A stretch of DNA of 64,000 bases, taken from contig NC_091285.1 in NCBI RefSeq assembly GCF_032444005.1, positions 13,020,001 through 13,084,000 on the forward strand, read 5' to 3'. The stretch is from Ranitomeya imitator (taxonomy: Eukaryota). The position numbers were made by a program, and so were the translations under genes. The notes beneath the pieces are model-generated. The model was not told the origin of the DNA, ran no database searches, and saw nothing but the letters and a program-made list of their open reading frames with translations. Shown here piece by piece: positions 12,613 through 57,644 of this stretch (its first letter is position 1; the number at the start of each line of letters is the position of its first letter).

Positions 12613-13179
12613 AGGGCAACTGTCACCCCCCTCCAGCCGTTATAAACTAAAAGAGCCACCTTGTGCAGCAGGTGATGCTGCATTCTAACAAGGTGGCTCT
12701 TTTAGTTTTTGTTTCTGCTATTCCCACAATAAATGTATTTATAATTCTGCTGAAATACCTGTCTTTGTCCATGGAGGCGGGTCTGAAGCCTCCTCTTAGA
12801 ATCGCCCAACTGCCGTCAGTCATCTCTTGTGTAGATTTTCGCCGCCCCCTCAGCGCTGTTATTGTGTGAATTCCGGCGCCTGCGCTCTGCTCTTCTGCCT
12901 TGTGCAGGCGCTTAGAGCATTTGCCGTCCTAGCGCTGGTGCCGGGTTCCGTTCTGCGCCTGTGCGGCCACCCTGTTACTGAATCCCCGCCCCGCACTGTG
13001 TTATGCATTATGCACAGTGCGGGGCTGGGATTCCTGGGCATGCGCACTGCGCTTCTCAGACGCTCCCCAGGTCCCCCGCCTTTCAGCGTTGCCGGAATAT
13101 ACAGGTATCCTTGCCGGCGTCTGGAACAGCCGCACAGAACAACGCTGGAAGGCGGGGGACCTGTGGTGACAGTGGCCCT
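12613..13179. mobile_element. Kolobok/T2-type MITE
   Basis: AGGGC(A/C)ACTGTCAC inverted termini, TTAA on the right; absent at the paralogous GGGGTTAATGTCACC site (~2313). Confidence 0.75.
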
Positions 13180-14240
13180 TTAATGTCACCTTTGAATTGT
13201 AAGGTGGCATTAAGCCCGGTTAATAATGGAGAGGCGTCAATAAGGTACCTATATATTACTAATCCTATAGTAGCGAAAGAGTTTAAAAAAAAAAAAAAAA
13301 AAAGACAGCCAGAAAAAAGTATTTTAATATTCTTAATTTCACCATACTTACCATACTCAATCGCCTGCAAAAAATAAAAATAATAAACGAACCGTATACT
13401 CCCTGTGTGACGCAGTCCAATTAATAACGAGTGTCCGACAACGATCTCCCCTATAGAACAGTGACATCGGGTGATATCACTGCTCCATAGGCCTCCAGTG
13501 ACGCACGACAGGAGACAATGGCTCCTGCAGTGCATCACTGAAGAGGTTACTTTAGTTCATTGCTCTCACTTTATGGCAATGCTGTGTGGGAAATTTTCCA
13601 CGCAGCAGTGCCGAAAGTGACAGTATGAACAACAATACTCACAGCGGCGGAGGGATGCCTTCAGTCATTGAATCCCGGATCAATGGAGAGTGGTCGCATC
13701 TACAGATGTGACAGATCTCCACGGGATATCATCATGGGACACTCGTTATTAAAAGGATTACTGCGGATCAGGGAGTATATTGTTGTTTTATTATTTTAAT
13801 ATTTTTTGCAGGTAATCAATGGCTTCTGGGACAAGGTGATTGGTGAGTATGTACTCTATGTTGTATGTTCTGTATATGTGTGTATGTGTTTTGGTTTTTT
13901 TTTACACTTGAACACAGTAGCCTGATGATGGGACTATACTGTCCCATTATCCGGCTACCTGTCACTGTAGCAGGCATTGCCGGATAGGACTAGCAGTCCC
14001 ATCGGTTGATGCCTGCCTACATACATCCTCGCACACACGCAGCTCTGCACACAACGCCCCGTGATCCCCGCACAAGCCTACGATTCCCGCACAGCCCCGT
14101 GATCCCCGCACAGCCACACACACAAACACCCGCACCCAGACAGTCTCTGCCCACACACTCTTCCCCCTCCCGATCTGCATCGTTTCTCGCACCCAACTCC
14201 GCATCAAAAATAAGTGATTCTTCAGAATTACTTTTACTCT

Positions 14241-33389: not shown

Positions 33390-34790
33390 TGTTCCCTGCC
33401 ATCATTCCACTCTAATCAGTGTGTCCATTTATCTATTCCTTCTACAGGTATGTGACCTATCTTTCCACACTGACTTTTCCTACCTCTGCTACTTGCAACC
33501 ACTTGGTACGTGACCCAACTTGCTATGCTTTTCAACTAACCCCTGCCATACCCTCAATATTATTTATGACCTTGTTTACTGTGCCATGATCATCCTGCAT
33601 CAGGCTCACTCTTAATTATCTGACCAAGATGAGCACAGACCTCTCCCCTCTGTTTCACACCTGAATGCACTTTCTACCAAATATATTGCAAACAATATGT
33701 CTGCCCAGTGCACCATACGTGTGGAGCTATGAATTAATCCAGAATTGAACTAGAAAGGAACTGAAGGCAACTGGATACATAGTCATTGTAAACAATGTTT
33801 TTCTTTTCACTCTCACCCTTACCCCTATAATCCTTCACTTTCTACTAACCCCCTAATCCCTACATCTAGTAAGGAACTAGTCAGCTCTCCATTCATTCTC
33901 CCTATCCATCTCACCAGTTCCTCAACATACAATCCTCTGTCTCCAAACACAGCCCTCTCCTGCTCACTGCCGGTGATATTTCTCCAAATCCTGGTCCTTG
34001 TCACCACAACCCCACAGTCACCTCCCTAACCTTATACTCTTCAACTTAAAGTAAATGGCTGCTCACTCTCCCCAGTCCCACAAGCTCGCTGCTTCAGGGT
34101 AATCCTTAACTTTGATCTCTCCTTCAAACCACATATCCAAGCCCTTTCCACTTCCTGCCGACTTCAACTCAAAAATATTTCCCAGATCTGTACATACCTC
34201 AATCAAGAATCTGCAAAAACCCTAGTCCATGCCCCCATCATCTCCCGCCTTGGCTACTGCAACCTCTTACTTTGTGTTCTCCCTTCAAACACTCTCCTGC
34301 CCCTTCAATCTATTCTAAACTCTCTTGCCTGACTAATCCACTTATACCCCCGCTATTCCTTGGCCTCTCCCCTCTGTCAATCCCTTCACTGGCCCCCCCA
34401 TTACCCAGAGACTCCATTTCAAAACCCTAACCATAGCATACAAAGCCATCCACAACCTGTCTCCTTGTCTCCCAGTACTTACCTGCATGCAACCTCAGAT
34501 CCTCACAAGATCTCCTTCTCTACTCCCCTGTTCCAACAATCGTATACAAGATTTCTCCACGCATCCCCCTTACTCGGGTATTCTCTACTCCAACATATCA
34601 GATTCTTGCCTACCGTGGAAACATTCAAAAGGAACTTGAATATTACCTCTTCCCACAAGCCTGCAACCTGCAGTAACCACCGATCCACTACATGACCAGC
34701 TCTGCCCTCACCTATCCCTTTGTAGATTGTGGGCCCTCGCTCCTCCTGTACCAGTCGTGACGTTTATTAAGATTATTGTACTTTTTATTA
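33390..34790 (+). mobile_element. L2 LINE remnant
   Basis: Degenerate RT C-terminus (LSFKPHIQALSTSCRLQLKNIS, KTLVHA, IISRL.YCN) and 3' UTR. Confidence 0.75.
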
Positions 34791-34984
34791 TCCATACCCC
34801 TTTGCTCCCCTGACCAGTGATTTCTCTGTCTCACAGTCATTAATAGTGTTGAGCATTCCGATACCGCAAGTATCGGGTATCGGCCGATATTTGCGGTATC
34901 GGAATTCCGATACTGAATTCCGATACTTCCCGCGTATCGGATACCGGAATCGGAAGTTCCCAGAATTCAAATTGAACGCAGCAG

Positions 34985-35114
34985 CCAATGAGGAATGAAT
35001 GAAAGTGTGGGCACATCCTGTTTAGCATGGTGGGCATGTAAGTACTGGCAAGGCTGGGATTGGCTGCTGAAATGATGTCACTCTGCACTATAAAAAAGCG
35101 CTGCCGCCATTTTG
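34985..35114 (+). promoter_or_regulatory. Candidate Pol II promoter in the hAT left end
   Basis: CCAAT 34985, ATTGG 35059, TATAAAA 35089, YY1-like GCCGCCATTTTG 35103. Confidence 0.5.
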
Positions 35115-35329
35115 CGCTCACTCTGCTGTGATTTCAGTTAGGGACAGGACGCTGTGTTCTAACTGAGGGCCAGTCGAGCTAGCTAATTGCTTTATTTTCC
35201 TTTCCAAAGGCTAATTTAGCAAAACGCTGTGTGTTCTTCACTGTTCACCTTGCTCTTGCCTTGCAGCGCTGTTTTAACAGCGTTCTGCAAGGTCTCTGTG
35301 TGTGTGTGTGTGTGTGTGCAGCTCACTCT

Positions 35330-36610
35330 GTAGTCTGTGTGCAGCCATATACCCGGTTGTATTCAGCTCAGGGGGGGTTCACACTGCCTCACACAGTTGT
35401 TCTTTTTTGCTCTTAGTGCAGCCTGCTGCACATTTTTTCTCAAATTTCCTATTAGTGTTTTTCCACCAGTCTCCAGCTCTATTGTGGAAAAACACTACAT
35501 AGGATAACCTAGAGGGGGGTTTTTGGGCCTTGCAGCGCCGTTTACGGCTGTCTGCACGGTCTCCGTGTGAGCCCAGCTCGCCCTGTAGTCTGTGTGCAGC
35601 CATAGCCGGTTGGATTCAGCTCAGGGTTCGTTACTGGCTCATACCTTGAGAAAAATTTTCCTTTTTTTCAAATAGTGCAGCCTGTTTAAAATTTGAAAAA
35701 AAAAATTCCTATTAGTGTCTTTCCACTCGTATCCAGCTAAATAGTGGAAAAACACTATATAGGATAACCTAGAGGAGGGTTTTTTGGCCTTGCAGCGCCG
35801 TTTACGGCTGTCTGCACGGTCTCCGTGTGAGCCCAGCTCGCCCTGTAGTCTGTGTGCAGCCATAGCCGGTTGGATTCAGCTCAGGGTTCGTTACTGGCTC
35901 ATACCTTGAGAAAAATTTTCCTTTTTTTCAAATAGTGCAGCCTGTTTAAAATCTGAAAAAAAAAATTCCTATTAGTGTCTTTCCACTCGTATCCAGCTAA
36001 ATAGTGGAAAAACACTATATAGGATAACCGAGAGGAGGGTTTTTTGGCCTTGCAGCGCCGTTTACGGCTGTCTGCACGGTCTCCGTGTGAGCCCAGCTCG
36101 CCCTGTAGTCTGTGTGCAGCCATAGCCGGTTGGATTCAGCTCAGGGTTCGTTACTGGCTCATACCTTGAGAAAAATTTTCCTTTTTTTCAAATAGTGCAG
36201 CCTGTTTAAAATTTGAAAAAAAAAATTCCTATTAGTGTCTTTCCACTCGTATCCAGCTAAATAGTGGAAAAACACTATATAGGATAACCTAGAGGAGGGT
36301 TTTTTGGCCTTGCAGCGCCGTTTACGGCTGTCTGCACGGTCTCTGTGTGAGCGCAGCTCGCCCTGTAGTCTGTGTGCAGCCATAGCCGGTTGGATTCAGC
36401 TCAGGGTGCGTTACTGCCTCATACCTTGAAAAACAATTTCCTTTTTTTCAAATAGTGCAGCCAGTTTAAAATTTGAAAAAAAAAATTCCTATTAGTGTCT
36501 TTCCACTCGTATCCAGCTAAATAGTGGAAAAACACTATATAGGATAACCGAGAGGAGGGTTTCTTGGCCTTGCAGCGCCGTTTACGGCTGTCTGCACGGT
36601 CTCCGTGTGA
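35330..36610. repeat. 260-bp tandem array (about 5 units) upstream of the transposase
   Basis: AGGATAACC at 35501, 35761, 36021, 36281, 36541. Confidence 0.95.
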
Positions 36611-36822
36611 TTTAAACTAGCTCTGTAGCCCGATCTGCACCAAAAAAAAGGTTAAGTTCACCAAACACAACTTACACTTGTGTAGGCCACATTTGAAAAA
36701 TAATAAAGTTTAGTCCACAATTTACAACATTAGTGTTTCTTACACCTGTTAGGAGGAGCATTACAGGAATAAGCACACTAAGGCCTTAGTACTTTTCTGC
36801 TTATCTTTATCTGTCAACCAAG

Positions 36823-39800
36823 ATGAAGAGGGCAGGGAGTAAGGCACGTGGGCGTGGGCGCGGAGCAGGGAGAGGAGCAGGGAGAGGACGTGGTGATTCT
36901 GTGCCTGCTGCGGGCGCCGGTGACTCGTCGTCACTCAGTTTCAGCAGGGAACAGTCCTTCATGCGCAGCTTTGTCGGAGAGCGCCGTGCACCGCTGCTGC
37001 GTGAAGACCAAATTGAAGCCGTTGTCGGGTGGATGGCAGCTAACGCCTCGGCATCGACTTCAGTTAGTGCCACATCCTCTCAGGCACAGAGCACTGGAGA
37101 GCAGCCATCTGTCTCTTCACCACCTGCCAAATTGGCCAGGCAGTCAGAGAGCCCAGGACAGGAGCCGTCTCTACTTCTGTTCTCTGAATCTCTTGGCTTG
37201 GAAACAGGGGGCCAGCCAAGCAGCATTGGAGAAATGGAAGAAGAGGCAGTGTGCAGTGATGCCCAACACCTTTTTCTCTCTGACTCTGAAGAGGCAGGTG
37301 GGCCAGTGCCTCCGGTGACCACAGCGCAGTACGCATCTGATGATGAAACTCAGGTGCCGCTTTCTCGTGCGTACTGTGCTGCTGAGACTACCCAGGAGGA
37401 GCAGTTGGTGGCAGAGGGTAGTGGAGATGATGAGGTCCTTGACCCATCGTGGCGTGAGGAACAGGAAGGTGGTGGGAGCAGCTCAGAGGAAGAGCTTCCT
37501 CTTACGGGCCAAAGAGGGAGAGGGAGGGGGAAGACTGCGGAGCCTGTAGCCTCCACTTTGGCACCCGTTAGGAGCCTGTCTCTTTCCAAAGCCAAAAAGG
37601 GCGCTCCCAAGACTTGCAGTGCCTGGTCCTTTTTTGACACAGTTGCAGATGACATTTGTTTTGTCAAATGCAAGCTGTGTCATCATAAAGTAAAAAGAGG
37701 GAAAAATGTCAGCAACCTCAATACCACAAATATGTGGAAACATGTGCGGACCAGGCACGCGGTGGAGTTACAGAAACACACTGAAGATGTAGGCCAACCA
37801 ACAGCGGCAGCTACCACCTCTTCAGCTCGTGTTGCCTCTTCCTCCAGCTCACGCACAGCTGGTTTGGCTTCCTCCCAGAGACCTTGTGTAATTCCACCCA
37901 CAGCACCACCTTCCCAGTCATCCTCACACTCCCAGTCTACTCTACAGCCATCGGTAGTACAGGCATGGGAGAAAAGGCGGGCATTCTCGGCCAACCACCC
38001 CCGAGCACAGGCTCTGAATGCAGGCATTGCCAAACTGTTGTCCCTGGAAATGCTCTCGTTCAGGCTGGTGGAGACTGACAGCTTCCGTGACTTGATGGCA
38101 TTGGCAGTCCCACAGTACAAGGTGCCCAGCCGCTTTTACTTCAGCAGGCAGGCTGTCCCTGCCCTGCACAGGCATGTTGAGGCAAACATAAAACATGCGC
38201 TACTGAACGCCGTCAGTAGCAAGGTCCACCTCACCACCGATGCGTGGACCAGTCAGCATGGACAGGGGCGATATGTTTCCCTCACTGCCCATTGGGTTAA
38301 TGTTGTTGAGCCAGGTACAGATCGTGCGAGTGGCGCAGGACGTGTCCTGCCCACTCCAAGGATTGCAGGAATCCAGTCTGTACGCATCGACTCCTCCTCT
38401 TACACCAGTTCCTCTGATTCCTCTCTGCAGGATCCGTCACAGTCCACCCCCACATGGACCCGTGAACGTTTACCTATGACCGACATGAGCACAGCCGTGG
38501 CCAAACGTCAGCAGGCCGTCTTGAAACTAGTTTCATTGGGGCATCGAAGCCACACAGCGCAGGAGCTCTGGAATGCTATAAAGCAGGAGAGCGATGTGTG
38601 GTTACTGCCAGCGAATCTCCAGCCAGGCATGGTAGTGTGTGACAATGGCCGAAATCTGGTGGCAGCTTTGGCCCTTGGCAACCTCACTCACATCCCATGT
38701 CTGGCACATGTGCTCAATTTGGTTGTGCAGAGTTTTCTGAGGGACTATCCGGATCTTGATGCCCTGCTGCACAAGGTCCGCCTAGAGTGTGCTCACTTGC
38801 GGCGTTCCAGCTTGGCCAGATCCCGCATTGCTGCTCTGCAGCGCCGATTCCGCCTTCCGGAACACCGCATCATATGTGACCTACCTACCCGGTGGAATTC
38901 CACGTTACATATGTTGGAGCGGTTGTGTGAGCAGCAGCAAGCAGTTATGGAGTACCAGCTGCATCAGGCGCAAAGAAGTCGCAGTCAGCGCCGATCAGAC
39001 TTCACAACCACAGAGTGGGCCACTATGAAGGACGTCTGCCAGGTTTTGCGTCCTTTTGATTATTCCACGCGGATGGCAAGTGCAGATGATGCACTAGTCA
39101 GCATGACTGTCCCCCTTATCTGCCTGCTTCAGCAAACTTTGCAAGGGTTAAGGGATGATGTGGTGGAAGAGGTGGAGGATGAGGAGTCACCTTTTCCATC
39201 AGCTTCTGGAGAGTCAGCGCCACGTGGTTCCTCACAAAGGGGTACGCAGGGGCCAATTTGTGAGGAGGATGAGGAGGAGTCAATGGAGGAGGAAGAGCTC
39301 CGTCCAAAGGAGGGAGCGACACAATTGTCCAGTGGTCAGTGTGTACAGCGAGGGTGGGGTGATGACGAGCGGGCAGAGATCATGTCTCAAGCAGGGGACA
39401 GCGTTTCTGGGCCGGTTGGCACTCTGCAGCACATGGTGGATTTCATGCTGCAGTGCCTGAGAAACGACCGCCGCATCGACCACATTCTCAACATGCCTGA
39501 TTATTGGGTGTTCACCCTCCTCGATCCTCGCTACCGGGACAACGTCCAAAACCTCATCCCTGCGTTGACCCGGGAGCGTAAATTGCGGGAGTACCACGAC
39601 ACACTGGTGAATTCCATCATCTTCTCCTGTCCAACTGAGAGGAGTGCTGCTAGTGCTTTACAAAGCAGCTCAGTGCGTCGAGGCAGTGGGGGAGGCTCTG
39701 CCCAAAGAGGGAGCAGAAGCAGTGCCTCTGCCCAAGGCAAGCCCAGTATGGCACAACTCTGGCACACTTTTGTGTGCCCGCCCCAAATGTCTACACCATC

Positions 39801-40131
39801 ACCGGCGGCTCCAGTCAGCAGGAGGCAACGGTTCCGTCAGATGGTGACAGACTACATGGCTTGCCCTCTTACTGTACTCCCAGACGGCTCTTCCCCGTTC
39901 AAGTTTTGGGTCTCTAAGCTGGATACATGGCCAGAGCTAAGCCAGTATGCATTGGAGGTGCTGGCTTGCCCTGCGGCTAGTGTCTTATCGGAACGTGTCT
40001 TTAGTGCCGCAGGTGGTGTACTAACAGACCGTCGCATGCGACTATCCTCCGATAACGTTGACCGGCTTACTTTCCTGAAAATGAACCAGGCCTGGATCTC
40101 GCAGGAATTTGCCACTCCTCTGCCTGATTAA
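36823..40131 (+). CDS. hAT transposase (ZBED-like), 1102 aa, intact
   Basis: BED finger W..CKLC..HVRTRH; TTDAW (D), CDNG (D), CLAH, TRWNS, SERVFS (E) in hATC domain; no stops. Confidence 0.95.
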   Translation: MKRAGSKARGRGRGAGRGAGRGRGDSVPAAGAGDSSSLSFSREQSFMRSFVGERRAPLLREDQIEAVVGWMAANASASTSVSATSSQAQSTGEQPSVSSPPAKLARQSESPGQEPSLLLFSESLGLETGGQPSSIGEMEEEAVCSDAQHLFLSDSEEAGGPVPPVTTAQYASDDETQVPLSRAYCAAETTQEEQLVAEGSGDDEVLDPSWREEQEGGGSSSEEELPLTGQRGRGRGKTAEPVASTLAPVRSLSLSKAKKGAPKTCSAWSFFDTVADDICFVKCKLCHHKVKRGKNVSNLNTTNMWKHVRTRHAVELQKHTEDVGQPTAAATTSSARVASSSSSRTAGLASSQRPCVIPPTAPPSQSSSHSQSTLQPSVVQAWEKRRAFSANHPRAQALNAGIAKLLSLEMLSFRLVETDSFRDLMALAVPQYKVPSRFYFSRQAVPALHRHVEANIKHALLNAVSSKVHLTTDAWTSQHGQGRYVSLTAHWVNVVEPGTDRASGAGRVLPTPRIAGIQSVRIDSSSYTSSSDSSLQDPSQSTPTWTRERLPMTDMSTAVAKRQQAVLKLVSLGHRSHTAQELWNAIKQESDVWLLPANLQPGMVVCDNGRNLVAALALGNLTHIPCLAHVLNLVVQSFLRDYPDLDALLHKVRLECAHLRRSSLARSRIAALQRRFRLPEHRIICDLPTRWNSTLHMLERLCEQQQAVMEYQLHQAQRSRSQRRSDFTTTEWATMKDVCQVLRPFDYSTRMASADDALVSMTVPLICLLQQTLQGLRDDVVEEVEDEESPFPSASGESAPRGSSQRGTQGPICEEDEEESMEEEELRPKEGATQLSSGQCVQRGWGDDERAEIMSQAGDSVSGPVGTLQHMVDFMLQCLRNDRRIDHILNMPDYWVFTLLDPRYRDNVQNLIPALTRERKLREYHDTLVNSIIFSCPTERSAASALQSSSVRRGSGGGSAQRGSRSSASAQGKPSMAQLWHTFVCPPQMSTPSPAAPVSRRQRFRQMVTDYMACPLTVLPDGSSPFKFWVSKLDTWPELSQYALEVLACPAASVLSERVFSAAGGVLTDRRMRLSSDNVDRLTFLKMNQAWISQEFATPLPD

Positions 40132-40352
40132 GTAATTGGGTGTCATCCAGGTCTCCTGCTGTGTTCATCTTTCTACCACCTGAACTGCTATTCCTGGGCT
40201 CCAACACCGCCAGTTGCGGCTCAGAAGTGCAGGCTGCACAGTAAAAACATACGACCCAGTGTTATTGGGTTTCAGTAACGTCAGCTGATCCCCAGCTGTG
40301 TAGCCGGCAATGTGTCCTGCGACCGCCACGCTGGCACAACAACCTAAATGTA

Positions 40353-41366
40353 AGGGAACCTGTCCCCCCCCCCCCCCGTCGTTTGTTACTGAAAGAGCCA
40401 TCTTGTGCAGCAGTAATGCTGCACAAGGAAAAGGTAGCTCTTTTTTTTTAGCTCTTTGCACACGCAGAACTTAACACTTATAAAATGTGTTCACTGATAC
40501 CGTTATACCGTCCCGGAGCTGGGACTTTCCTTCGTAATGTGACGCAGCACAGCCGTCATTCCTACCCCCTTGGTGCCATGCGCTGCCTCCTCAGCGTTGT
40601 TTTAAGCTGTCACGGAGCCTGCGCTGTTCTGTTATCCCTTGGGCATGCCCTATTTGCGCTGCCTGTCTTCTGACATAATTTGGTGTCAGGCTGGCTGCGC
40701 CTGTGCGGCCGCGGTGCCCGAGATCCCGCCTCGCAGTGTCTTCTGATTGAGTCACACTGCGGGCCTGGGATCCATGGGCATGCGCAGTGCATATCTTCCC
40801 CTCGGGCTCTCGCTCATTTCCCTCCGCCTTCTTTAGACTGTGCGCCGTCAGCTGATCCCTAGCATGCCACGGCCGTGACACCGCACAGTCTGAAGAAGAG
40901 GGAAGGAGGGGAGTGAGAGTCGAGGTTATGCACTGTGCATGCCCATGGTTCCAAGGCCCGCAGTGGGATTACGTTAGATGAGACTGCGAGGTGGGATCTG
41001 GAGCAGCGTGGACGCACAGGCACTGACAGCCTGACACCAAATTATGTCAGAAGACAGGCAGCGCTAATTGGGCATGGCCAAGGGCTAACAGAACAGCGCA
41101 GGCTCCGTGGCAGCTTAAAACAACGCTGAGGAGGCAGCGCACGGCATCAAGGGGATAGGAATGACAGCTGTGCTGTGTCCCATTACGAAGGAAATTCGCA
41201 CCTCCGGAACGGTTTAACGGTATAAAGGGACACATTTTTAGTGTTTACTTCGGTGTTTGCAAGGAGCATAATTAAAAGAGCAACCTTTTCCTTTTGCATC
41301 CTTAGTGCTGCACAACATGGCTCTTTCAGCTACAAACGTCTTGGGGGGGGGGGTTAAAGGTTTCCT
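40353..41366. mobile_element. ~1-kb palindromic Kolobok/T2-like MITE inside the hAT (copy 1 of 7)
   Basis: AGGGAACCTGTCCCCC...GGGGTTAAAGGTTTCCT; arms of ~480 bp around ~40860; left end resembles 12613. Confidence 0.75.
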
Positions 41367-41399
41367 TTCAACTTGCTCCAATCAGGCTTCGGCCTACAC

Positions 41400-41830
41400 T
41401 CTGTTCCTCTGCTCCTCCTGCTGTCCCTGGGCTCTAACACCGCCAGTTGGTGCCTGGAAGTGCTGTGTGCACAGTCAACAGTCGCTCCTCTGTTATTGGG
41501 GTTCAGTAACGTCAGCTGATCCCCAGCTGTGTGTGCGGCAATACCTCCAATCTGCTCCTCCTGCTGTCCCTGGGCTCTAACACCGCCAGTTGGTGCCTGG
41601 AAGTGCTGTGTGCACAGTCAACAGTCGCTCCTCTGTTATTGGGGTTCAGTAACGTCAGCTGATCCCCAGCTGTGTGTGCGGCAATACCTCCAATCTGCTC
41701 CTCCTGCTGTCCCTGGGCTCTAACACCGCCAGTTGGTGCCTGGAAGTGCTGTGTGCACAGTCAACAGTCGCTCCTCTGTTATTGGGGTTCAGTAACGTCA
41801 GCTGATCCCCAGCTGTGTATCCGGCAACGT
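41400..41830. repeat. 143-bp tandem repeat x3
   Basis: GCTCCTCCTG at 41411, 41554, 41697. Confidence 0.95.
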
Positions 41831-41866
41831 GTCATGCGACCGCCACGCTGGCACAACTAAAATGTA

Positions 41867-44800
41867 AGGGGACCTGTCCCCCCCCCCCCTAGGCGTTTGT
41901 TACTGAAAGAGCCACCATGTGCAGCACTAATACTGCACAAGGGAGAGGTCGCTCTTGAAATTATGCTCCTTGCAAACGCTGAACTACACACTCATGTAAT
42001 GTGTCCCCTCACACCGTCCAACCGTCCTGGAGGTGGGACTTTCCTTTGTAATGTGACGCAGCACAGCCGTCATTGCTACCCCCTTGGCACCGTGCGCTGC
42101 CTCCTTAGCGTTGTTTGATTCCGTCATGGACCCTGCGCTGTTATGTTATCCCTTGGCCATGCACAGTTTGCGCTGCCCGTCCTCTGACATCATTTGTTGT
42201 CGTCCTGGCTGCGCCTGTGCGTCCACGCTGCCCGAAATCACACCTCGCAGTGTCGTCTAATGTGATCCCACAGTGGGCCTGGTATCCATGGCCATGCGCA
42301 GTGCATATACTAGCCTCTCACTCCCCTTCTTCACGCTTCTTCAGACTAGGCGGCGTCAGCTGATCCCTAATAGCATGCCACGGCCGTGACGCCGCACAGT
42401 CTGAAGAAGCAGGAAGGAGGTGAGTGAGAGGCGATGATATGCACTGCGCATGCCCATGGATCCCTGGCCCGCAGTGGGACTACATTAGATGACACTGCAA
42501 GGTTGGATCTCGGGCAGCTTGGACGCACAGGCACTGCCAGCCTGACACCTACATGATGTCAGAAGACGGGCACCGCTAACTGTGCATGGCCAAGGGATAA
42601 CATTACAGTGCGGGCTCCGTGACAGAACCAAACAACGTTGAGGAGGTGGTGCCCGGCACCAAGGGGGTTGGAATGACGGCTGTGCTGTGTCACATTACAA
42701 AGGAAAGTCCCACTTCCGGGATGGTTTGACGGTGTGAGGGGACACATTATATGAGTGTGTACTTCAGCGTTTGCAAGGAGCATAATTTTCGGAGCCACCA
42801 TTTTCCATGTGCAGTATTACTGCTGTACAAGATGGCTCTTTCAGCAACAAATGCCTGGGGGGGGGGGTTAAAGGTTCCCTTTCAACTTGCTCCACTGCAG
42901 GCTTCGGCCTACACTCTGCTCCTCTTTGATTCCCTGGGTTTCAACACTGTCAGTTGCCACCTGGAAGTGTTGTCTACACAGAAAAAAACACTAGGTGATG
43001 TGTCAGTGGGGTTCAGCACCGCCAGCTGTTCCCCTGCTGTGTAGTCGGCAACGTGTCCAGCACAAGCCACGCTGGCACAACAGAACAAAAGCTGCCACCA
43101 GTGCAGGCTTCGGCCTACACTCTGCTCCTCTCCTCCTCCTGCTGACCCTGGGCTCAAACACCGCTAGTTTTTGCCCGGAAGTGCTAGCTGCACAGAGAAA
43201 AACACCAGCCAATGTGTTAGTGGGGTTCAGCAACGCCAGCTGTTCCCCTGCTGTGTAGCCGGCAACGTGACCTGCAAACGCCATGCAGGCACAGGAACTG
43301 AAATTAAAAGGGAACCTGGCCCCACCCCCCCAGGTGTTTCTATGTATAACAGCCACCTAGTACAGCAGTACTGCTGCATTTGTACAAGGTGGCTGACTTT
43401 TTCTCCTTGCCCACGTGGAACTCAACACGTACAAAATGTGTCTCATTGAGACCATTCCACTGTCCCTGAGGTGTGACTTTCCTTTGTAATGATACGCAGC
43501 ACCCCCCTTGGTAGCGTTTCCCGTCTTTTGTCATCATGGTTAGCTGGCTGCGCCTGTGCATCCGCCCTGCTAGAAACAACGCCCCTCGTTGTCATATTTA
43601 TTTTGTCAGCGAGGGTGTGGTTTATGGGCACGAGCAGTGCATATGTTCGCCTGTCTTAACTCATCTCCTTCCGCCTTCTTCAGACTGTGCGGCCTCCTGG
43701 CCGTGGTAGGCGATAAGGGATCAGCTGAGGCCGCCCAGTCTGGAGCAGGTGTAAGGACATGTGTAAGCGGCAAACATATTTACTGCACAAGGCCACGAAT
43801 CCCAGCCACGCAGTGTGATTTTTTGAAAACACACTGTGGGTCTGGGATTCATGTCCATCGCTAACCGCAACGGCCGACATGAAATGAGGTCAGAAGACAG
43901 GAAGCGCTCACAGCGCATGGCCAAGGGATCACAATAGCGCAGACTCCTGTACAGCAAATAACAACGCTCAGGAATCTGCGCCCAGTACCTAGGTGCAAAT
44001 TTTGACACCTGTGCTGCGTCTCGTTAAAAAGACAAGTCACGCCTCCACAACTGTTTGACAGTATAATGGGCTAAATAGTGTACGTGTTTTAGTCAGCGTG
44101 TGCAAGGAGCAAAACAAATAGAGCAACCTTTTACTTGTGCAGCATTAATGCTGCACAAGGTGTGGCTCTTGTACCTTGCAACACCTGAGGGGGGGGTTAA
44201 AGGTAACCTTTGAAATTGGTTCAACTAGGCTTCGGCCTACACTCTGCTCCTCTACTCCTCCTGCTGACCCTGGGCTCAAACACCGCTAGTTTTTGCCCGG
44301 AAATGCTAGCTGCACAGAGAAAAACACCAGCCAATGTGTTAGTGGGGTTCAGCACCGCCAGCTGTTCCCCTGCTGTGTAGTCGGCAACGTGTCCAGCACA
44401 AGCCACGCTGGCACAACCGACCAAAAGCTGCCACCAGTGCAGGCTTCGGCCTACACTTTGCTCCTCTCCTCCTCCTCCTGCTGACCCTGGGCTCTAACAC
44501 CGCTAGTTTTTGCCCGGACATGCAATCTGCACAGAGAAAAACACCAGTCAATGTGTCAGTGGGGTTCAGCAACGCCAGCTGTTCCCCTGCTGTGTAGCTT
44601 GCAACGTGACCTGCAAACGCCACGCAGGCACATGAACTGAAATTGAAGGGAGCCTGCCCCCCACCCCCCCAGGTGTTTCTATGTATAACAGCCACCTTGT
44701 ACAGCAGTACTGCTGCATTTGTACGAGGTGGCTGACTTTTTCTCCTTGCCCACGTGGAACTCAACACGTACAAAATGTGTCTCATTAGAGACCATTACAA

Positions 44801-47800
44801 TGTCCCTGAGGTGTGACTTTCCTTTGTAATGACACGCAGCACCACCCTTGTTAGCGCTGCCCGTCTTTTGACATCATTGGTTAGCTGGCTGCGCCTGTGC
44901 ATCTCCCCTGCTCGAAACAACGGCCCTCGGTGTCTTATTTTTTTGGACAGCGAGGGTGTGATTGATGGGCATGTGCAGTGCATATGTTTGCCTGTGTTCA
45001 CTCATCTCCTTCCGCCTTCTTCAGACTGGGTGTCCTCATGGCCGCGGCAGGCGATAAGGGATCAGATGAGGCCGCCCAGTCTGAAGCAGGTGTAAGGACA
45101 TGTGTGAGCGGCAAACATATTTAGTGCACCAGGGCACGAATCCCAGCACCGCAGTGTGATTTTTTAAAAACACACTGTGGGTCTGGGATTCATGTCCATC
45201 GCTAACCGCAACGGCCGACATGAAATGAGGTCAGAAGACAGGAAGCGCTCACAGCGCATGGCCAAGGGATCACAATAGCGCAGACTCCTGTACAGCAAAT
45301 AACAACGCTCAGGAATCTGCGCCCAGTACCTAGGTGCAAATTTTGACACCTGTGCTGCGTCTCGTTAAAAAGACAAGTCACGCCTCCACAACTGTTTGAC
45401 AGTATAATGGGCTAAATAGTGTACGTGTTTTAGTCAGCGTGTGCAAGGAGCAAAACAAATAGAGCAACCTTTTACTTGTGCAGCATTAATGCTGCACAAG
45501 GTGTGGCTCTTGTACCTTGCAACACCTGAGGGGGGGGTTAAAGGTAACCTTTGAAATTGGTTCAACTAGGCTTCGGCCTACACTCTGCTCCTCTACTCCT
45601 CCTGCTGACCCTGGGCTCAAACACCGCTAGTTTTTGCCCGGAAATGCTAGCTGCACAGAGAAAAACACCAGCCAATGTGTTAGTGGGGTTCAGCACCGCC
45701 AGCTGTTCCCCTGCTGTGTAGTCGGCAACGTGTCCAGCACAAGCCACGCTGGCACAACCGACCAAAAGCTGCCACCAGTGCAGGCTTCGGCCTACACTTT
45801 GCTCCTCTCCTCCTCCTGCTGACCCTGGGCTCAAACAACGCCAGTTTCTGCCCGGACATGCTAGCTGCACAGAGAAAAACACCAGCCAATGTGTTAGTGG
45901 GGTTCAGCACCGCCTGCTGTTCCCCCGCTGTGTAGCCGGCATCGTGTCCAGCACAAGCCACGCTGGCACAACCGACCAAAAGCTGCCACCAGTGCAGGCT
46001 TCGGCCTACACTTTGCTCCTCTCCTCCTCCTGCTGACCCTGGGCTCAAACAACGCCAGTTTCTGCCCGGACATGCTAGCTGCACAGAGAAAAACACCAGC
46101 CAATGTGTTAGTGGGGTTCAGCAACGCCAGCTGTTCCCCTGCTGTGTAGCTTGCAACGTGACCTGCAAACGCCACGCAGGCACATGAACTGAAATTGAAG
46201 GGAGCCTGCCCCCCACCCACAGGTGTTTCTATGTATATCAGCCACCTTGTACAGCAGTACTGCTGCATTTGTACGAGGTGGCTGACTTTTTCTCCTTGCC
46301 CACGTGGAACTCAACACGTACAAAATGTGTCTCATTAGAGACCATTACAATGTCCCTGAGGTGTGACTTTCCTTTGTAATGACACGCAGCACCCCCATTG
46401 TTAGCGCTGCCCGTCTCCTGACATCATTGGTTGGCTGGCTGTGCCTGTGCGTCCCCCCTGCCCGACACAACGCCCCCCGTTGTCTCATATATTTTGACTG
46501 CGAGGGTGTGATTGATGGGCACGAGCAGTGCATATGTTCCCCTGTTTTCACTCCCCTCCTTCCGCCTTCTTCTGACTGTGCGGCCTCATGGCCGCGGCAT
46601 GCGATAAGGGATCAGCTGAGGCCGCCCAGTCTGAAGCAGGTGTAAGGACATGTGTGAGCGGCGAACATATTTACTGCACAAGGCCACGAATCCCAGCACC
46701 GCAGTGTGACTTTAGGAAAAGCCACTGTGGGTCTGGGATTTATGGCCATCGTTAACCGCACCGGCCAACATGAAATGAGGTCATGAGACGGCCTGCACTA
46801 ACAGGGTATTGCCAAGGGATAACACAAGAGCGCAGACTCCTGTACAGCAAATAACAACGCTCAGGAATCTGCGCCCAGTACCTAGGTGCAAATTTTGACA
46901 CCTGTGCTGCGTCTCGTTAAAAAGACAAGTCACGCCTCCACAACTGTTTGACAGTATAATGGGCTAAATAGTGTACGTGTTTAATTCAGCGTGTGCAAGG
47001 AGCAAAATTAAATAGAGCAACCTTTGACTTGTGCATCATTAATGCTGTTCAAGGTGTGGCTCTTGTACCTTGCAACACCTGAGGGGGGGGTTAAAGGTAA
47101 CCTTTGAAATTGGTTCAACTAGGCTTCGGCCTACACTCTGCTCCTCTACTCCTCCTGCTGACCCTGGGCTCAAACACCGCTAGTTTTTGCCCGGAAATGC
47201 TAGCTGCACAGAGAAAAACACCAGCCAATGTGTTAGTGGGGTTCAGCACCGCCAGCTGTTCCCCTGCTGTGTAGTCGGCAACGTGTCCAGCACAAGCCAC
47301 GCTGGCACAACAGAACAAAAGCTGCCACCAGTGCAGGCTTCGGCCTACACTTTGCTCCTCTCCTCCTCCTGCTGACCCTGGGCTCAAACAACGCCAGTTT
47401 CTGCCCGGACATGCTAGCTGCACAGAGAAAAACACCAGCCAATGTGTTAGTGTGGTTCAGCACCGCCAGCTGTTCCCCCGCTGTGTAGCCGGCATCGTGT
47501 CCAGCACAAGCCACGCTGGCACAACCGACCAAAAGCTGCCACCAGTGCAGGCTTCGGCCTACACTTTGCTCCTCTCCTCCTCCTCCTGCTGACCCTGGGC
47601 TCTAACACCGCTAGTTTTTGCCCGGACATGCAATCTGCACAGAGAAAAACACCAGTCAATGTGTCAGTGGGGTTCAGCAACGCCAGCTGTTCCCCTGCTG
47701 TGTAGCTTGCAACGTGACCTGCAAACGCCACGCAGGCACATGAACTGAAATTGAAGGGAGCCTGCCACCCACCCCCCCAGGTGTTTCTATGTATAACAGC

Positions 47801-49998
47801 CACCTTGTACAGCAGTACTGCTGCATTTGTACAAGGTGGCTGACTTTTTCTCCTTGCACACGTGGAACTCAACAAGTACAAAATGTGTCTCATTACAGAC
47901 CATTACAATGTCCCTGAGGTGTGACTTTCCTTTTTAATGACACGCAGCACCCCCATTGTTAGCGCTGCCCGTCTCCTGACATCATTGGTTGGCTGGCTGT
48001 GCCTGTGCGTCCCCCCTGCCCGACACAACGCCCCCCGTTGTCTCATATATTTTGACTGCGAGGGTGTGATTGATGGGCACGAGCAGTGCATATGTTCCCC
48101 TGTTTTCACTCCCCTCCTTCCGCCTTCTTCTGACTGTGCGGCCTCATGGCCGCGGCATGCGATAAGGGATCAGCTGAGGCCGCCCAGTCTGAAGCAGGTG
48201 TAAGGACATGTGTGAGCGGCGAACATATTTACTGCACAAGGCCACGAATCCCAGCACCGCAGTGTGACTTTAGGAAAAGCCACTGTGGGTCTGGGATTTA
48301 TGGCCATCGTTAACCGCACCGGCCAACATGAAATGAGGTCATGAGACGGCCTGCACTAACAGGGTATTGCCAAGGGATAACACAAGAGCGCAGTTTCCTG
48401 TACTGCAAATAACAACGGTAAGGAATCTGCGCACAGCACCTAGGTGTAAATTTGTACACCTGTGCTGCGTCTCCTTAAAAAGACTAGTAGTCACGCCTCC
48501 ACTACTGTTTGACAGTATAATGGGCTAAATAGTGTACGTGTTTAATTCAGCGTGTGCAAGGAGCAAAATTAAATAGAGCAACCTTTGACTTGTGCATCAA
48601 TAATGCTGTTCAAGGTGTGGCTCTTGTACCTTGCAACACCTGAGGGGGGGGTTAAAGGTAACCTTTGAAATTGGTTCAACTAGGCTTTGGCCAACACTCT
48701 GCTCCTCTACTCCTCCTGCTGACCCTGGGCTCAAACACCGCTAGTTTTTGCCCGGAAATGCTAGCTGCACAGAGAAAAACACCAGCCAATGTGTTAGTGG
48801 GGTTCAGCACCGCCAGCTGTTCCCCTGCTGTGTAGTCGGCAACGTGTCCAGCACAAGCCACGCTGGCACAACAGAACAAAAGCTGCCACCAGTGCAGGCT
48901 TCGGCCTACACTTTGCTCCTCTCCTCCTCCTGCTGACCCTGGGCTCAAACAACGCCAGTTTCTGCCCGGACATGCTAGCTGCACAGAGAAAAACACCAGC
49001 CAATGTGTTAGTGGGGTTCAGCACCGCCAGCTGTTCCCCTGCTGTGCAGCTTGCAACGTGACCTGCAAACGCCACGCAGGCACATGAACTGAAATTGAAG
49101 GGAGCCTGCCCCCCACCCACAGGTGTTTCTATGTATATCAGCCACCTTGTACAGCAGTACTGCTGCATTTGTACGAGGTGGCTGACTTTTTCTCCTTGCC
49201 CACGTGGAACTCAACACGTACAAAATGTGTCTCATTAGAGACCATTACAATGTCCCTGAGGTGTGACTTTCCTTTGTAATGACACGCAGCACCCCCATTG
49301 TTAGCGCTGCCCGTCTCCTGACATCATTGGTTGGCTGGCTGTGCCTGTGCGTCCCCCCTGCCCGACACAACGCCCCCCGTTGTCTCATATATTTTGACTG
49401 CGAGGGTGTGATTGATGGGCACGAGCAGTGCATATGTTCCCCTGTTTTCACTCCCCTCCTTCCGCCTTCTTCTGACTGTGCGGCCTCATGGCCGCGGCAT
49501 GCGATAAGGGATCAGCTGAGGCCGCCCAGTCTGAAGCAGGTGTAAGGACATGTGTGAGCGGCGAACATATTTACTGCACAAGGCCACGAATCCCAGCACC
49601 GCAGTGTGACTTTAGGAAAAGCCACTGTGGGTCTGGGATTTATGGCCATCGTTAACCGCACCGGCCAACATGAAATGAGGTCATGAGACGGCCTGCACTA
49701 ACAGGGTATTGCCAAGGGATAACACAAGAGCGCAGACTCCTGTACAGCAAATAACAACGCTCAGGAATCTGCGCCCAGTACCTAGGTGCAAATTTTGACA
49801 CCTGTGCTGCGTCTCGTTAAAAAGACAAGTCACGCCTCCACAACTGTTTGACAGTATAATGGGCTAAATAGTGTACGTGTTTAATTCAGCGTGTGCAAGG
49901 AGCAAAATTAAATAGAGCAACCTTTGACTTGTGCATCATTAATGCTGTTCAAGGTGTGGCTCTTGTACCTTGCAACACCTGAGGGGGGGGTTAAAGGT
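41867..49998. repeat. Higher-order array: palindromic MITE copies 2-7 separated by 2-3 copies of a ~180-bp subrepeat
   Basis: MITEs at 41867-42880, 43309-44209, 44647-45550, 46199-47103, 47755-48664, 49099-gap; periods ~1330-1560 bp. Confidence 0.9.
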
Positions 49999-50098
49999 NN
50001 NNNNNNNNNNNNNNNNNNNNNNNNNNNNNNNNNNNNNNNNNNNNNNNNNNNNNNNNNNNNNNNNNNNNNNNNNNNNNNNNNNNNNNNNNNNNNNNNNN
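49999..50098. other. Assembly gap (100 N)
   Basis: Run of exactly 100 N, typical of an unknown-size join. Confidence 0.99.
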
Positions 50099-50379
50099 TA
50101 TAGCGGTATACAGCACTGAGGGTTTACTGCAGTATATGGAGATAAAGCAGCACAATATGATAAGGATTTCCAGACGTATATAGCACTATATGGGGGTATA
50201 AAACAAGATATGGAGAGTATATAGAACTACATGTCGGTATACAGCAGGATATAGAGTATATAGCACTATGGGGTTATACAGCAGGATATGGAGAGTATAT
50301 AGCACTATATGAGGGTGTACGGCAGGATATGGAGGATATATAATAGCACTATATGGGGGTATACAGCAGGATATAATCC

Positions 50380-50800
50380 TTTGCTCCCCTGACCAGTGAT
50401 GATCTCAGTGATTTCTCTCGGTCTCACGCCGCCATTGTTCCGAGCAGGTCGTCACCGGGGAGGACTCAGGTCTGTGACTAGATGTAACGTCCTCGCGATA
50501 AAATGACAGGAAAAAGTGCGGGAAATTCAAAATCCCCAACAGTTCTGTGCTCCGCCCACATGTGAGGAGAAGCCGCGGCTCCTGCTGCTGGGGGAGGGGC
50601 TGGTGATCGCCCGGTGCCCGGATGGCTGCAGTCTGCTCTGCGGGAGCTGGAAACATCGGAATCTAAAGGGTTAACACCAAGTGTCTGCGGGGAAGTGACC
50701 CAGTGGGCGGAGCCATAGCCCTACTGAGTGCTGATTGGCTGAGCGCTGAATATGAAATTCCCGCCCAACGCTCTTTGTTCTCCTCAGTAACACGTGGTGT
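50380..50800 (+). other. H4-ghost element 3
   Basis: Same sequence and junction (~50551), preceded by 41-bp repeats. Confidence 0.78.
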
Positions 50801-51017
50801 GATGGCGGCGGCTCCTGACAGACTGAGTGGATCTTGTAGATAACTCACTATGCGACAGTGTGTACAGCATATGGCGGTATATACCGCGCTATATGGGGGT
50901 TATATCCCAATATATTTTACTCCCTCATCTAGTGCTATCAATTCCTCAGCGTTAGAGACGTTTTCATCAATGTGCACATTAGGGATCACACTAGTCCTCA
51001 GCATTAGAGCTTTGTGT

Positions 51018-56177: not shown

Positions 56178-57644
56178 GGTCTCTGTTCTGCTAAAACAAC
56201 ACAAAGGCTCTTCTAAGAGCCCCCCACATCTTCTGAGGAGAAGCTACAGCTGCCGAGGAGGGGAAGGGGCTGCTGATAGTACTGTGCTGGGATGACTGCA
56301 GCTGGAAACATTGCAGGCTCTAATGGGTTAACACTGAGGGTCTTGGGGGTTAAGGAATCTGGTGATGTGTGGGGGTGGAGCCATAGTACTATTTGGTGTT
56401 CATGTGTTGTATACTGCAATATTTGAGGAAGAACAGAATATCAGGAATATACAGCGCTATATGGAGGGTGTACAGTACAGTGTGGAAAGCGTATAGGCAG
56501 CAATAGCACAATTTGTGTATACGGCACTAGATGAACAGGATTGTGAAGGAAGCCATTTTGTCATCCACCTTCTTCCCTGAATTTATCATGTACATGGACT
56601 TTACTCCAAGCATCCCCCATCCTTGAAGAACAAGTTCTGGACTCTGTATGAGGGCAGGCCATATCCATTGTGCTTGTCAGGATCACCCTGAATACTTACA
56701 ATTAATTTGCATACTTGTCTATATAATCCTGTGTGAGTCTAAATAACCAGAAATTTACATTATGCGCAAAATAATAGAAAAAAGCTGAATCCTCACAATA
56801 GCCTTTATTTCCATATATACAGAGGCGCTGGGAGCTGCACACTCTATTCCAAATGAAAACCTAGATAGATAAACATATCTATAGATAGATATATCTATGT
56901 ATAGATAGATATCTCTATAGATATAGATCTATCTATATCGATCTGTCAATTGAATCTATATCTAAATCTATCTATCGATAGAAAAAATCTGCTTTAGGCC
57001 GAGGTCACAATTTACGAGAAACTTGCACACGTCTCGCACCTCAATACCCGGTACTTGGACAGGAGCGTCCAGCTGCATAGAAATACATGGAGCCGCACAG
57101 TCCGGTGCAGAGTGCCAGTTGCAGTGTTGGGTATTGAGGCGAGAGACTCGTGCAAGTGTCTCGCAAGTGTGACCCCGGCCTGAAACACCATATCTTTTTA
57201 ATTTTTTAAAAAAATTTGCGTGGGCTCCTGTGCAATTTTCAAGTCCTGAGTGGGAAAGCCAGCGACTGGGGGTCGATGTTTATAGCCTAGGAAGCAGGTA
57301 ATACTCATGGCCTCCTCCCAGGCTATGAATATCAGCCCAAAACTGTCTGCGTGGCCTTTACTGGCTATTAAAATAGGGGGACCCCCCCCCAAAAAAAAAT
57401 GATGTGGGGTCCCCCTATATTTTATAGCCAGAAAGGCTACTCATACAGCTGCGGGCTGATATTCATAGCCTAGAGAGGAGTCATGGATATTGCCCCCCCT
57501 GCTGCAAATACCAGCCCACAACCGCTCCAGAAATGGCGCATCTATAAGATGCGCCAATTCTGGCACTTAGCTCCTCTCTTCCCACTGCCCTGTAACAGTG
57601 GGATATGGTGTAATAAGGGGTTAATGTCACCTTTGTATTGTAAG

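What the first reader, a model, noticed from the sequence alone, without database searches (positions are those of the whole stretch)
40353..49998. A captured Kolobok/T2-like palindromic MITE amplified into a higher-order satellite inside the hAT
Seven 0.9-1.0-kb units begin AGGG(A/G)(A/G)CCTG and end GGTT/AACCT, with TTAA-like flanks. Their left ends match the free T2 MITE at 12613 (AAAGAGCCA.CTTGTGCAGCAG). Copies 1-2 are strong palindromes; copies 3-7 are decayed but nearly identical to each other and mosaic. Between them are 2-3 copies of a 143-180-bp subrepeat homologous to DNA just after the transposase stop (40185-40345). This records MITE capture followed by two levels of tandem amplification. 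MITE-derived tandem repeats are known in Xenopus (Xmix/Xstir), but I do not recall this nested cargo architecture. The palindromes could form cruciforms or dsRNA from read-through transcripts, giving built-in silencing.
Basis: partly seen in the sequence, partly recalled or inferred. Interest (0 to 1): 0.75.

Follow-up and report, generated by a model that had tools for sequence, protein, structure and literature searches.

The report
Foldback MITE array inside frog hAT
Behind the intact transposase gene of a giant poison-frog-type hAT jumping gene lies a tandem array of at least 9.8 kb, built from one captured 1-kb hairpin mini-transposon of another type plus the hAT's own short repeats; this is a clear example of a known route from transposon to satellite-like DNA, not a new kind of system.

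Summary
Seven units start AGGG(A/G)(A/G)CCTG at 40353, 41867, 43309, 44647, 46199, 47755 and 49099. They are separated by 2-3 copies of a short repeat, S, which also stands just after the transposase stop. Units 1-2 are 1-kb palindromes (arms 84-85% alike). Units 3-7 are decayed palindromes, 90-100% alike (U5 = U7, 900/900).

The flanks of each unit rebuild an S-S linker, so one element landed in the S field and the S+unit block was then multiplied. The ends are T2-type (AGGRR). A 566-bp relative at 12617-13182 is a real insertion at a TTAA site, absent from paralogous DNA.

The hAT left end (34844) and its transposase are sound. The right end and the end of the array lie in the assembly gap at 49999, so "inside the hAT" is not proven in this window.

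Other samples and coded organisms hold the same junctions, plus variants that lack whole units. One possibly-RNA run shows a cluster of A>G changes on unit 1, a weak hint of edited hairpin RNA.

This scan has already met the same family elsewhere in this genome. The mechanism is known (Xstir, miDNA4, Tetris); the cross-superfamily cargo is the twist. Interest is moderate.

The parts
34836..34843 (.). 8 bp next to the hAT left end (GTCATTAA), the presumed target-site copy
   Evidence: the matching right copy is not in the window
34844..34953 (+). hAT left end: TIR TAGTGTTGAGC plus subterminal CCGATAC/GTATCGG motifs
   Evidence: The same 110 bp (83-90% identical) ends three short derivatives that have perfect 8-bp TSDs
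35258..36628 (+). 260-bp tandem repeat (about 5 copies) upstream of the transposase gene
   Evidence: self-BLAST
36823..40131 (+). Uninterrupted 1102-aa hAT transposase ORF (BED zinc finger, hAT dimerisation domain)
   Evidence: Pfam. 85% identity over 98% of its length to a Ranitomeya variabilis protein. It keeps every column that is invariant among six relatives, including D473, D607, C626/H629 and E1057
40185..40348 (+). S0: first copy of the S subrepeat, 54 bp after the stop codon
   Evidence: 77-78% identical to later S copies. Contigs of three other runs bridge stop to S0 with 0 differences (records 12, 21, 28)
40353..41366 (.). U1: 1-kb foldback (palindromic) T2-like unit
   Evidence: hairpin MFE -781 (+ strand) and -747 (- strand) kcal/mol
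41367..41866 (+). Spacer with three S copies (143-bp period, 99% alike)
41867..42880 (.). U2: 1-kb foldback unit
42881..43308 (+). Spacer with two S copies (B1a, B1b)
43309..44209 (.). U3: decayed foldback unit, B type
44210..44646 (+). Spacer with two 214-bp S copies (types a, c1)
44647..45550 (.). U4: B-type unit (95% identical to U3)
45551..46198 (+). Spacer with three S copies (a, b, c2)
46199..47103 (.). U5: B-type unit, identical to U7 over 900 bp
47104..47754 (+). Spacer with three S copies (a, b, c1)
47755..48664 (.). U6: B-type unit (98% identical to U5)
48665..49098 (+). Spacer with two S copies (a, c2)
49099..49998 (.). U7: B-type unit, cut a few bases before its end by the assembly gap
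49999..50098 (.). Assembly gap (100 N). It hides the rest of the array, the hAT right end and probably more. It was not filled
   Evidence: The post-gap DNA at 50378-50436 is paralogous to the hAT's left flank at 34798-34843
12617..13182 (+). Free-standing T2-like MITE, a distant relative of the units
   Evidence: Homology. Absent from paralogous DNA at 2315 and 57619, where one TTAA stands

Best explanation
An autonomous hAT transposon starts at 34844 with the TIR TAGTGTTGAGC and has an intact 1102-aa BED/hAT transposase gene. Behind that gene it carries a field of its own short repeats, S.

A roughly 1-kb foldback non-autonomous element with T2-MITE-type ends (AGGRR, TTAA-like flanks; the type ascribed to Kolobok) inserted once into an S-S linker.

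Soon afterwards the S+foldback block was duplicated, giving three lineages: U1, U2 and the ancestor of U3-U7. These then diverged for a long time, 0.1-0.25 changes per site.

Much later the third lineage was multiplied to at least five copies by unequal exchange or replication slippage between units. S copy number changed separately, for example the 143-bp triplet that is 99% alike.

The array is non-coding cargo that travels with the hAT. The hAT thereby spreads satellite-like, hairpin-forming DNA through the genome.

Shown: the anatomy, the single insertion site, the order of duplications, the homology to a mobile T2-like MITE, and the presence of the same junctions in other samples. Inferred: the mechanism of amplification, that the array lies between the hAT's two ends in this copy, and Kolobok as the mobilising enzyme of the ancestor.
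For: - Units and spacers: seven units with conserved ends, and the spacers between them.
- Single insertion site: the joined flanks of U1/U2 match an uninterrupted S-S linker at 49/55 and 49/57, score 46-49 against a shuffle maximum of 15. For U3/U5 the match is 42/52 and 43/53 (and by eye).
- Order of events: in the arm tree the four arms of U1/U2 are star-like. The left arms and the right arms of U3-U7 each form a clade on stems of 0.20-0.22, supported 100/100 and 94/99.
- T2 ends: AGGGA/AGGGG at all seven left ends and AGGAA/AGGGA at the right ends of U1/U2. The definition (TTAA target plus terminal AGGRR) is from PMC6004289.
- Free relative: 12617-13182 is present here and absent in paralogues, at a TTAA.
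- hAT family: three short derivatives have perfect 8-bp TSDs; transposase domains and conservation.
- Other samples: contigs bridge stop-S0, U1-S and S-U3 in other runs, including organisms B and D. Joints that skip one unit length (1513, 1518, 1333, 1441) show copy-number variants. Word depth of U1/U2 is about equal to that of the transposase, and U3-type and S are several-fold higher, as expected if they sit mostly in hAT copies.
- No coding or known RNA: no Pfam hit for array ORFs, no Rfam hit.
Against: - The hAT right TIR and the second TSD copy are not in the window. The array ends in an assembly gap, and the DNA beyond the gap is a paralogue of the left flank. Containment in this copy is therefore unproven, and a scaffold error cannot be excluded.
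- No unit has an intact TTAA on both sides, and present-day uninterrupted S-S linkers hold no TTAA.
- The right ends of U3-U7 read AGGTT, not AGGRR.
- The free relative is only about 75% alike over about 200 bp and belongs to another subfamily. No free copy of the 1-kb unit itself was found, and contig depth gives no sign of one at 90% likeness or more.
- Depth from contigs is not a copy number.
Confidence: 0.75

Rival explanations
1. The array is not cargo. The hAT is truncated or ends just after its transposase gene, and the S+foldback array is an independent satellite that happens to adjoin it, or was joined to it by misassembly.
For: The right TIR is absent from the window. There is a gap at 49999, and the post-gap DNA is paralogous to the left flank rather than continuing it.
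Against: The stop-S0 junction is reproduced with 0 differences in contigs of three other runs and two other coded organisms. U1/U2 word depth tracks transposase depth. No hAT TIR stands between 40131 and 40185. Unchecked notes of this scan report complete 21.6-25 kb copies with the array between transposase and right end.
Confidence: 0.1
2. The palindromes arose in place by inverted duplication of local DNA (a replication fork-stalling or template-switch type event) and were never a transposon.
For: There is no intact TTAA pair around any unit, and no free 1-kb copy was found.
Against: The terminal 100 bp and a central 98 bp are homologous to a separate element that shows presence/absence at a TTAA site. 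The ends are AGGRR. The unit interrupts an S-S linker cleanly.
Confidence: 0.05
3. The foldback array is kept because it works for the element. Read-through transcripts from the transposase gene fold into roughly 500-bp hairpins that feed RNA editing or small-RNA pathways and damp the hAT's own activity (self-regulation). This adds to the cargo reading rather than replacing it.
For: U1 folds into an almost unbroken hairpin on either strand (-781 and -747 kcal/mol). The array has stayed with an intact transposase through 0.1-0.25 changes per site. Run X15, guessed to be RNA, holds contigs of the transposase, S and U. One of these contigs has 7 A>G changes in 54 bp that are absent from the DNA run X1. 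X15 shows A>G at 29 places against 5, 8 and 2 in the other runs. Six of the 8 sites pair with U in the hairpin, and none has a 5' G.
Against: This rests on one contig in one run whose RNA nature is a guess and which comes from a different individual. The neighbour preference is not significant for 8 sites. Palindrome arms decay at about the same rate as the units diverge from each other, with no excess of compensating or wobble-preserving changes. U3-U7 have largely lost the hairpin yet are the ones amplified.
Confidence: 0.1

Closest known systems
Xenopus T2-MITE Xmix and its tandem-repeat derivative Xstir (Hikosaka & Kawahara 2004, as described in PMC6004289 and PMC12628747)
   Same: It is an amphibian T2-type MITE (TTAA target, AGGRR ends) that gave rise to tandem repeats. 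MITE, array and composite forms exist side by side.
   Different: In Xstir an internal segment of the MITE is amplified, and the arrays are free in the genome. Here the whole foldback element plus its flanking host repeat is the repeating block, and the array rides inside an autonomous element of another superfamily.
Tetris foldback transposon and TIR-220 satellite of Drosophila virilis (PMC4079207)
   Same: A foldback-type non-autonomous DNA transposon is linked to kb-size satellite-like arrays.
   Different: In Tetris the tandem repeats lie inside the long TIRs and expand from there. TRF found no tandem repeats inside the arms here. The element itself is the monomer, and it is nested in a hAT.
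miDNA4, a Tc1/mariner MITE of Xenopus tropicalis carrying a variable internal satellite (Scalvenzi & Pollet 2014, as described in PMC12054243 and PMC12628747); also Helentron-borne satellite-like arrays of oyster (PMC7492417)
   Same: A mobile DNA element carries a tandem array whose copy number varies between copies, and transposition disperses the array.
   Different: In those cases the carrier is non-autonomous and the array monomers are not transposons of another superfamily. Here the carrier encodes an apparently working transposase.
Nested TE insertions in general
   Same: One DNA transposon is inserted in another.
   Different: Ordinary nesting inactivates or merely interrupts the host element. 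Here the guest was multiplied at least seven-fold, and the host element's gene stayed intact.

Membership tests
T2-MITE family (non-autonomous, ascribed to Kolobok) | Terminal AGGRR motif in the TIR (PMC6004289) | tested here: met
   Left ends are AGGGA or AGGGG in all 7 units. Right ends are AGGAA/AGGGA in U1/U2 but AGGTT in U3-U6.
T2-MITE family (non-autonomous, ascribed to Kolobok) | TTAA target-site duplication | tested here: inconclusive
   Unit flanks are TGTA/TTCA, TAAA/TTGA and TTGA/TTGA, each one change from TTAA and never TTAA on both sides. The free relative has TTAA on its right side and one TTAA at the empty paralogous site; its left copy is lost.
T2-MITE family (non-autonomous, ascribed to Kolobok) | Short, non-coding, inverted-repeat structure | tested here: met
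   Units are 0.9-1.0 kb and the whole element is a foldback. The ORFs have no Pfam hit. This is at the large end for a MITE.
T2-MITE family (non-autonomous, ascribed to Kolobok) | Many dispersed free copies; mobilised by a Kolobok transposase | not testable with these tools
   No search of this genome was possible. There is one distant free relative in 64 kb. Contig depth gives no sign of free copies at 90% likeness or more.
hAT superfamily (carrier element) | Transposase with hAT dimerisation domain, BED finger and conserved catalytic residues | tested here: met
   Pfam PF05699 at 1.9e-14 and PF02892 at 1.6e-7. Invariant D473, D607 and E1057 are kept.
hAT superfamily (carrier element) | Short TIRs and 8-bp target-site duplication | tested here: inconclusive
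   Met for three short derivatives with the same TIR (TSDs ATTGTAAG, CTCGCGAC). For the large element only the left TIR is in the window; the right end lies in or beyond the gap.
Satellite DNA / higher-order repeat | Head-to-tail array of many monomers, with a higher-order period | tested here: met
   Seven or more blocks of 1.34-1.56 kb. S types are ordered a-(b)-c, with c1/c2 alternating, and U5 = U7 at a spacing of 2900 bp. The pattern is mosaic rather than a clean higher-order repeat.
Satellite DNA / higher-order repeat | Long (tens of kb to Mb) arrays free of the transposon, usually in heterochromatin | not tested
   Only this 9.8-kb array, cut by a gap, was seen.
Foldback elements of the FB/Tetris type | Long TIRs built of internal tandem subrepeats | tested here: not met
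   TRF reports tandem repeats only in the spacers, none within the arms.

The most novel reading that the evidence does not exclude
The foldback array is a self-regulating module of the hAT. It would be co-transcribed with the transposase gene and fold into long double-stranded RNA. That RNA would be hyper-edited (A-to-I) or diced, tuning the element's own activity and allowing a giant autonomous hAT lineage to persist and stay abundant in a very large frog genome.
Probability: 0.1. Interest if true: 0.7.

Novelty: new variant of a known kind. Interest (0 to 1): 0.38.

Why it matters
The locus records, step by step, how a DNA transposon can breed and carry satellite-like DNA. The steps are one nested insertion, an early duplication, a long quiet period and a recent burst, all inside an element whose transposase still looks functional. 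In frogs with multi-gigabase genomes, such giant array-filled hATs may add bulk and seed tandem repeats and hairpin-forming sites that break assemblies; the array here ends in a gap. If the hairpins are transcribed and edited, the family would also be a natural case of a transposon carrying its own double-stranded-RNA source.

Tried and rejected
No other genomic copy could therefore be read, and the right end could not be checked.
- The hAT right TIR was searched for in the window. The only + strand hits other than 34844 belong to three short derivatives.
- The empty-site test for the big hAT failed as a containment test. The post-gap DNA is a paralogue of the left flank, not its continuation.
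- Target-site reading for the units gave no exact TTAA pair, and present S-S linkers lack TTAA.
- Rfam scan of 34000-51000: nothing.
- Pfam on four array ORFs: nothing.
- Strand bias of hairpin stability or of wobble-type arm mismatches, as a sign of selection on an RNA: none of note. Energies were -781 against -747 kcal/mol; G:T against A:C mismatches were 18:12 and 26:13.
- ADAR neighbour preference at the 8 A>G sites is compatible with editing but not significant.
They are a separate old lineage.
Full report

- A self-comparison of 36-52 kb shows a block structure from 40185 to 49998 that stops at a run of 100 N (49999-50098).
- The motif AGGG(A/G)(A/G)CCTG marks seven unit starts at 40353, 41867, 43309, 44647, 46199, 47755 and 49099.
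- All units end ...GGGGTTAAAGGT(TT/TC/AA)CCT. Unit boundaries are good to 1-2 bases.
- U1 and U2 are about 1014 bp. Aligned to their own reverse complement they are 84-85% identical over about 1000 bp, with alignment scores of +1114 and +1173 against about -550 for shuffles.
- U3-U6 are about 901-910 bp with a much weaker but real palindrome (score -63 to -138 against about -500).
- As RNA, U1 forms a nearly unbroken roughly 500-bp hairpin on either strand (-781 and -747 kcal/mol). U5 still folds far better than shuffles (z = -17).
- U1-U2 are 83% alike. U1/U2 against U3-U7 are 67-70% alike. U3-U7 are 90-100% alike among themselves, and U5 and U7 are identical over 900 bp.

**2. Spacers.**

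- Between units lie 2-3 copies of a subrepeat S. Three 143-bp copies at 41408-41827 are 99% alike, and 214-bp copies follow from 43105 on.
- A first copy, S0 (40185-40345), stands 54 bp after the transposase stop and is 77-78% like the others.
- In the later part, S falls into position-specific types: a after a unit, b in the middle, c before a unit, with two c subtypes. These combine as a-c1, a-b-c2, a-b-c1, a-c2.

**3. One insertion, then amplification.**

- When the two flanks of a unit are joined, they rebuild an uninterrupted S-S linker. The match is 49/55 and 49/57 identical for U1 and U2 (score 46-49, shuffle maximum 15), and 42/52 and 43/53 for U3 and U5 (sequences).
- All seven units therefore sit at the same place in S. 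This means one insertion followed by duplication of the S+unit block.
- A maximum-likelihood tree of the 14 arms, with right arms reverse-complemented, shows the four arms of U1/U2 in a star-like group. The left arms of U3-U7 form one clade and their right arms another, each on a stem of 0.20-0.22 changes per site (support 100/100 and 94/99).
- The resulting history has four steps. First, a near-perfect foldback is inserted. Second, early duplications give U1, U2 and a third copy. Third, a long period of divergence follows. Fourth, the third copy is recently multiplied to at least five copies, the latest events leaving 98-100% identity.
- The 143-bp triplet (99% alike) is a separate recent event.
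- U3-U7 are thus not decayed copies of U1/U2 but an old sister lineage.

**4. What the unit is.**

- Its ends fit the published definition of the amphibian T2-MITE family, a TTAA target and terminal AGGRR, features shared with Kolobok transposons (PMC6004289).
- All seven left ends meet AGGRR, as do the right ends of U1/U2. The right ends of U3-U6 read AGGTT.
- The four bases outside the units are one change from TTAA (TGTA/TTCA, TAAA/TTGA, TTGA/TTGA), so the target-site test is inconclusive.
Unit positions 4-101 match at E = 3e-11 and positions 347-442 at E = 7.5e-13. The subterminal 22-mer occurs only in it and in the units, 7 hits against 0 expected.
- It is a true insertion. 12617-13182 is missing from paralogous histone-cluster DNA at 2315 and 57619, where a single TTAA stands (GGGGTTAATGTC). 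The filled site keeps TTAA on the right; the left copy is not preserved.
- It is a distant subfamily (about 75% identity, long branch), and no free copy of the 1-kb unit itself was seen.
- The array has no Pfam-recognisable ORF and no Rfam family.

**5. The carrier.**

- ORF 36823-40131 (1102 aa) has a BED finger and the hAT dimerisation domain.
- It is 85% identical over 98% of its length to a Ranitomeya variabilis protein.
- It keeps every column that is invariant among six relatives, including D473, D607, C626/H629 and E1057.
- The element's left end at 34844 (TAGTGTTGAGC...) is confirmed by three short derivatives in the same window that share its first 110 bp and have perfect 8-bp duplications: 2341-3123 and 57645-58437 with ATTGTAAG, and 15519-16963 with CTCGCGAC.
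- The right end is not in the window.
- The DNA after the gap (41-bp repeats, then CCTTTGCTCCCCTGACC... at 50378) is a paralogue of the hAT's left flank (34798-34843), not its continuation.
- The gap therefore hides the end of the array, the hAT's right end and probably more, or the scaffold join is imperfect. 'Inside the hAT' is thus not proven for this copy.

**6. Other samples.**

- Twenty public runs from nine studies hold much of 38500-44400.
- Contigs of four runs were laid on it. Runs X3 (organism B), X15 (organism A) and X20 (organism D) have pieces with 0 differences that bridge the stop codon and S0 (records 28, 12, 21).
- Other pieces bridge U1 to S (record 14) and S to U3 (records 15, 24).
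- The deep DNA run X1 shows joints that skip one block length (1513, 1518, 1441, 1333 bp) or skip U1-U2 altogether (2748/2756 bp). These are copies with fewer units, as unequal exchange predicts.
- Word depth over U1/U2 is about that of the transposase, and depth over S and U3-type is several-fold higher. This fits units that sit mainly in hAT copies, but the tool warns that contig depth is no copy number.

**7. A hint on RNA.**

- Run X15, only guessed to be RNA, has one contig (41167-41423, right arm of U1) with seven A>G changes within 54 bp. None of them appears in DNA run X1.
- X15 shows A>G at 29 places against 5, 8 and 2 in the other runs.
- Six of the eight listed sites pair with U in the predicted hairpin, and none follows a G.
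- This is what A-to-I hyper-editing of a hairpin transcript would look like. It is, however, one contig in one run from another animal, and the reads tool could be used only once.
- Arm mismatches show no clear bias that would point to selection on an RNA.

**8. Comparison and novelty.**

- MITEs that turn into tandem repeats are published for frogs (Xmix/Xstir, miDNA4). A foldback element feeding a satellite is published for Drosophila (Tetris). Mobile carriers of satellite-like arrays are published for oysters (PMC7492417).
- What differs here is the combination. The whole foldback element of one superfamily, together with a piece of its host's repeat, became the monomer. The array also rides in an apparently autonomous element of another superfamily.
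- I found no paper on this family. The two poison-frog genome papers looked at list hAT only as a class.
- Unchecked notes of this same scan describe the same family at several other places of this genome, as 21.6-25 kb elements with eight such units. The find is therefore not new to the scan, and those notes support containment, but I could not test them.

**9. Verdict.** The capture-and-amplification reading is well supported. Containment in this copy, Kolobok mobilisation and self-silencing remain open. It is a new variant of a known kind, of moderate interest.

Noticed in passing
window 2341-3123, 57645-58437, 15519-16963: Three short non-autonomous derivatives of the same hAT family (TIR TAGTGTTGAGC) with perfect 8-bp target duplications (ATTGTAAG twice, in the near-identical 8.3-kb duplicates; CTCGCGAC). 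The unfilled site of the first stands at about 13200 (GAATTGTAAGGTGG).
   Followed up: yes
window 12617-13182: A T2-like MITE is present here but absent from paralogous histone-cluster DNA at 2315 and 57619, where a single TTAA stands. This is evidence that this MITE type has moved since the cluster units duplicated.
   Followed up: yes
window 41167-41423 (run X15): One contig of a possibly-RNA run carries 7 A>G changes in 54 bp on the right arm of U1 that are absent from the DNA run. It looks like A-to-I hyper-editing of hairpin RNA, but rests on one contig.
   Followed up: partly
window 34798-34843 and 50378-50436: The hAT's left flank is paralogous to DNA after the assembly gap, so the two sides of the gap are not the two sides of one insertion site. 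The gap is likely much larger than 100 bases, or the join is imperfect.
   Followed up: partly
window 33319-34797: About 1.5 kb of AT-rich, CpG-poor (o/e 0.30) filler lies between a fragment of the 41-bp repeat array and the unit sequence that normally follows it. It is probably an older retroelement-like insertion. A 25-bp direct repeat (GAGCTATGAATTAATCCAGAATT) occurs at about 33345 and 33722.
   Followed up: no
window 31371-31573 and 32734-32936: A 203-bp inverted repeat at 99% identity bounds a roughly 1.57-kb segment. It is probably another young TIR element.
   Followed up: no
window 12299-12489: A roughly 190-bp palindrome (78% self-complementary) lies just upstream of the T2-like MITE. 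It is also present in the paralogues at about 2100-2190 and 57297-57494.
   Followed up: no
window 35258-36628: A second array of the hAT, about five copies of a 260-bp repeat (76-97% alike), lies between the left end and the transposase start. It is unrelated to S.
   Followed up: partly
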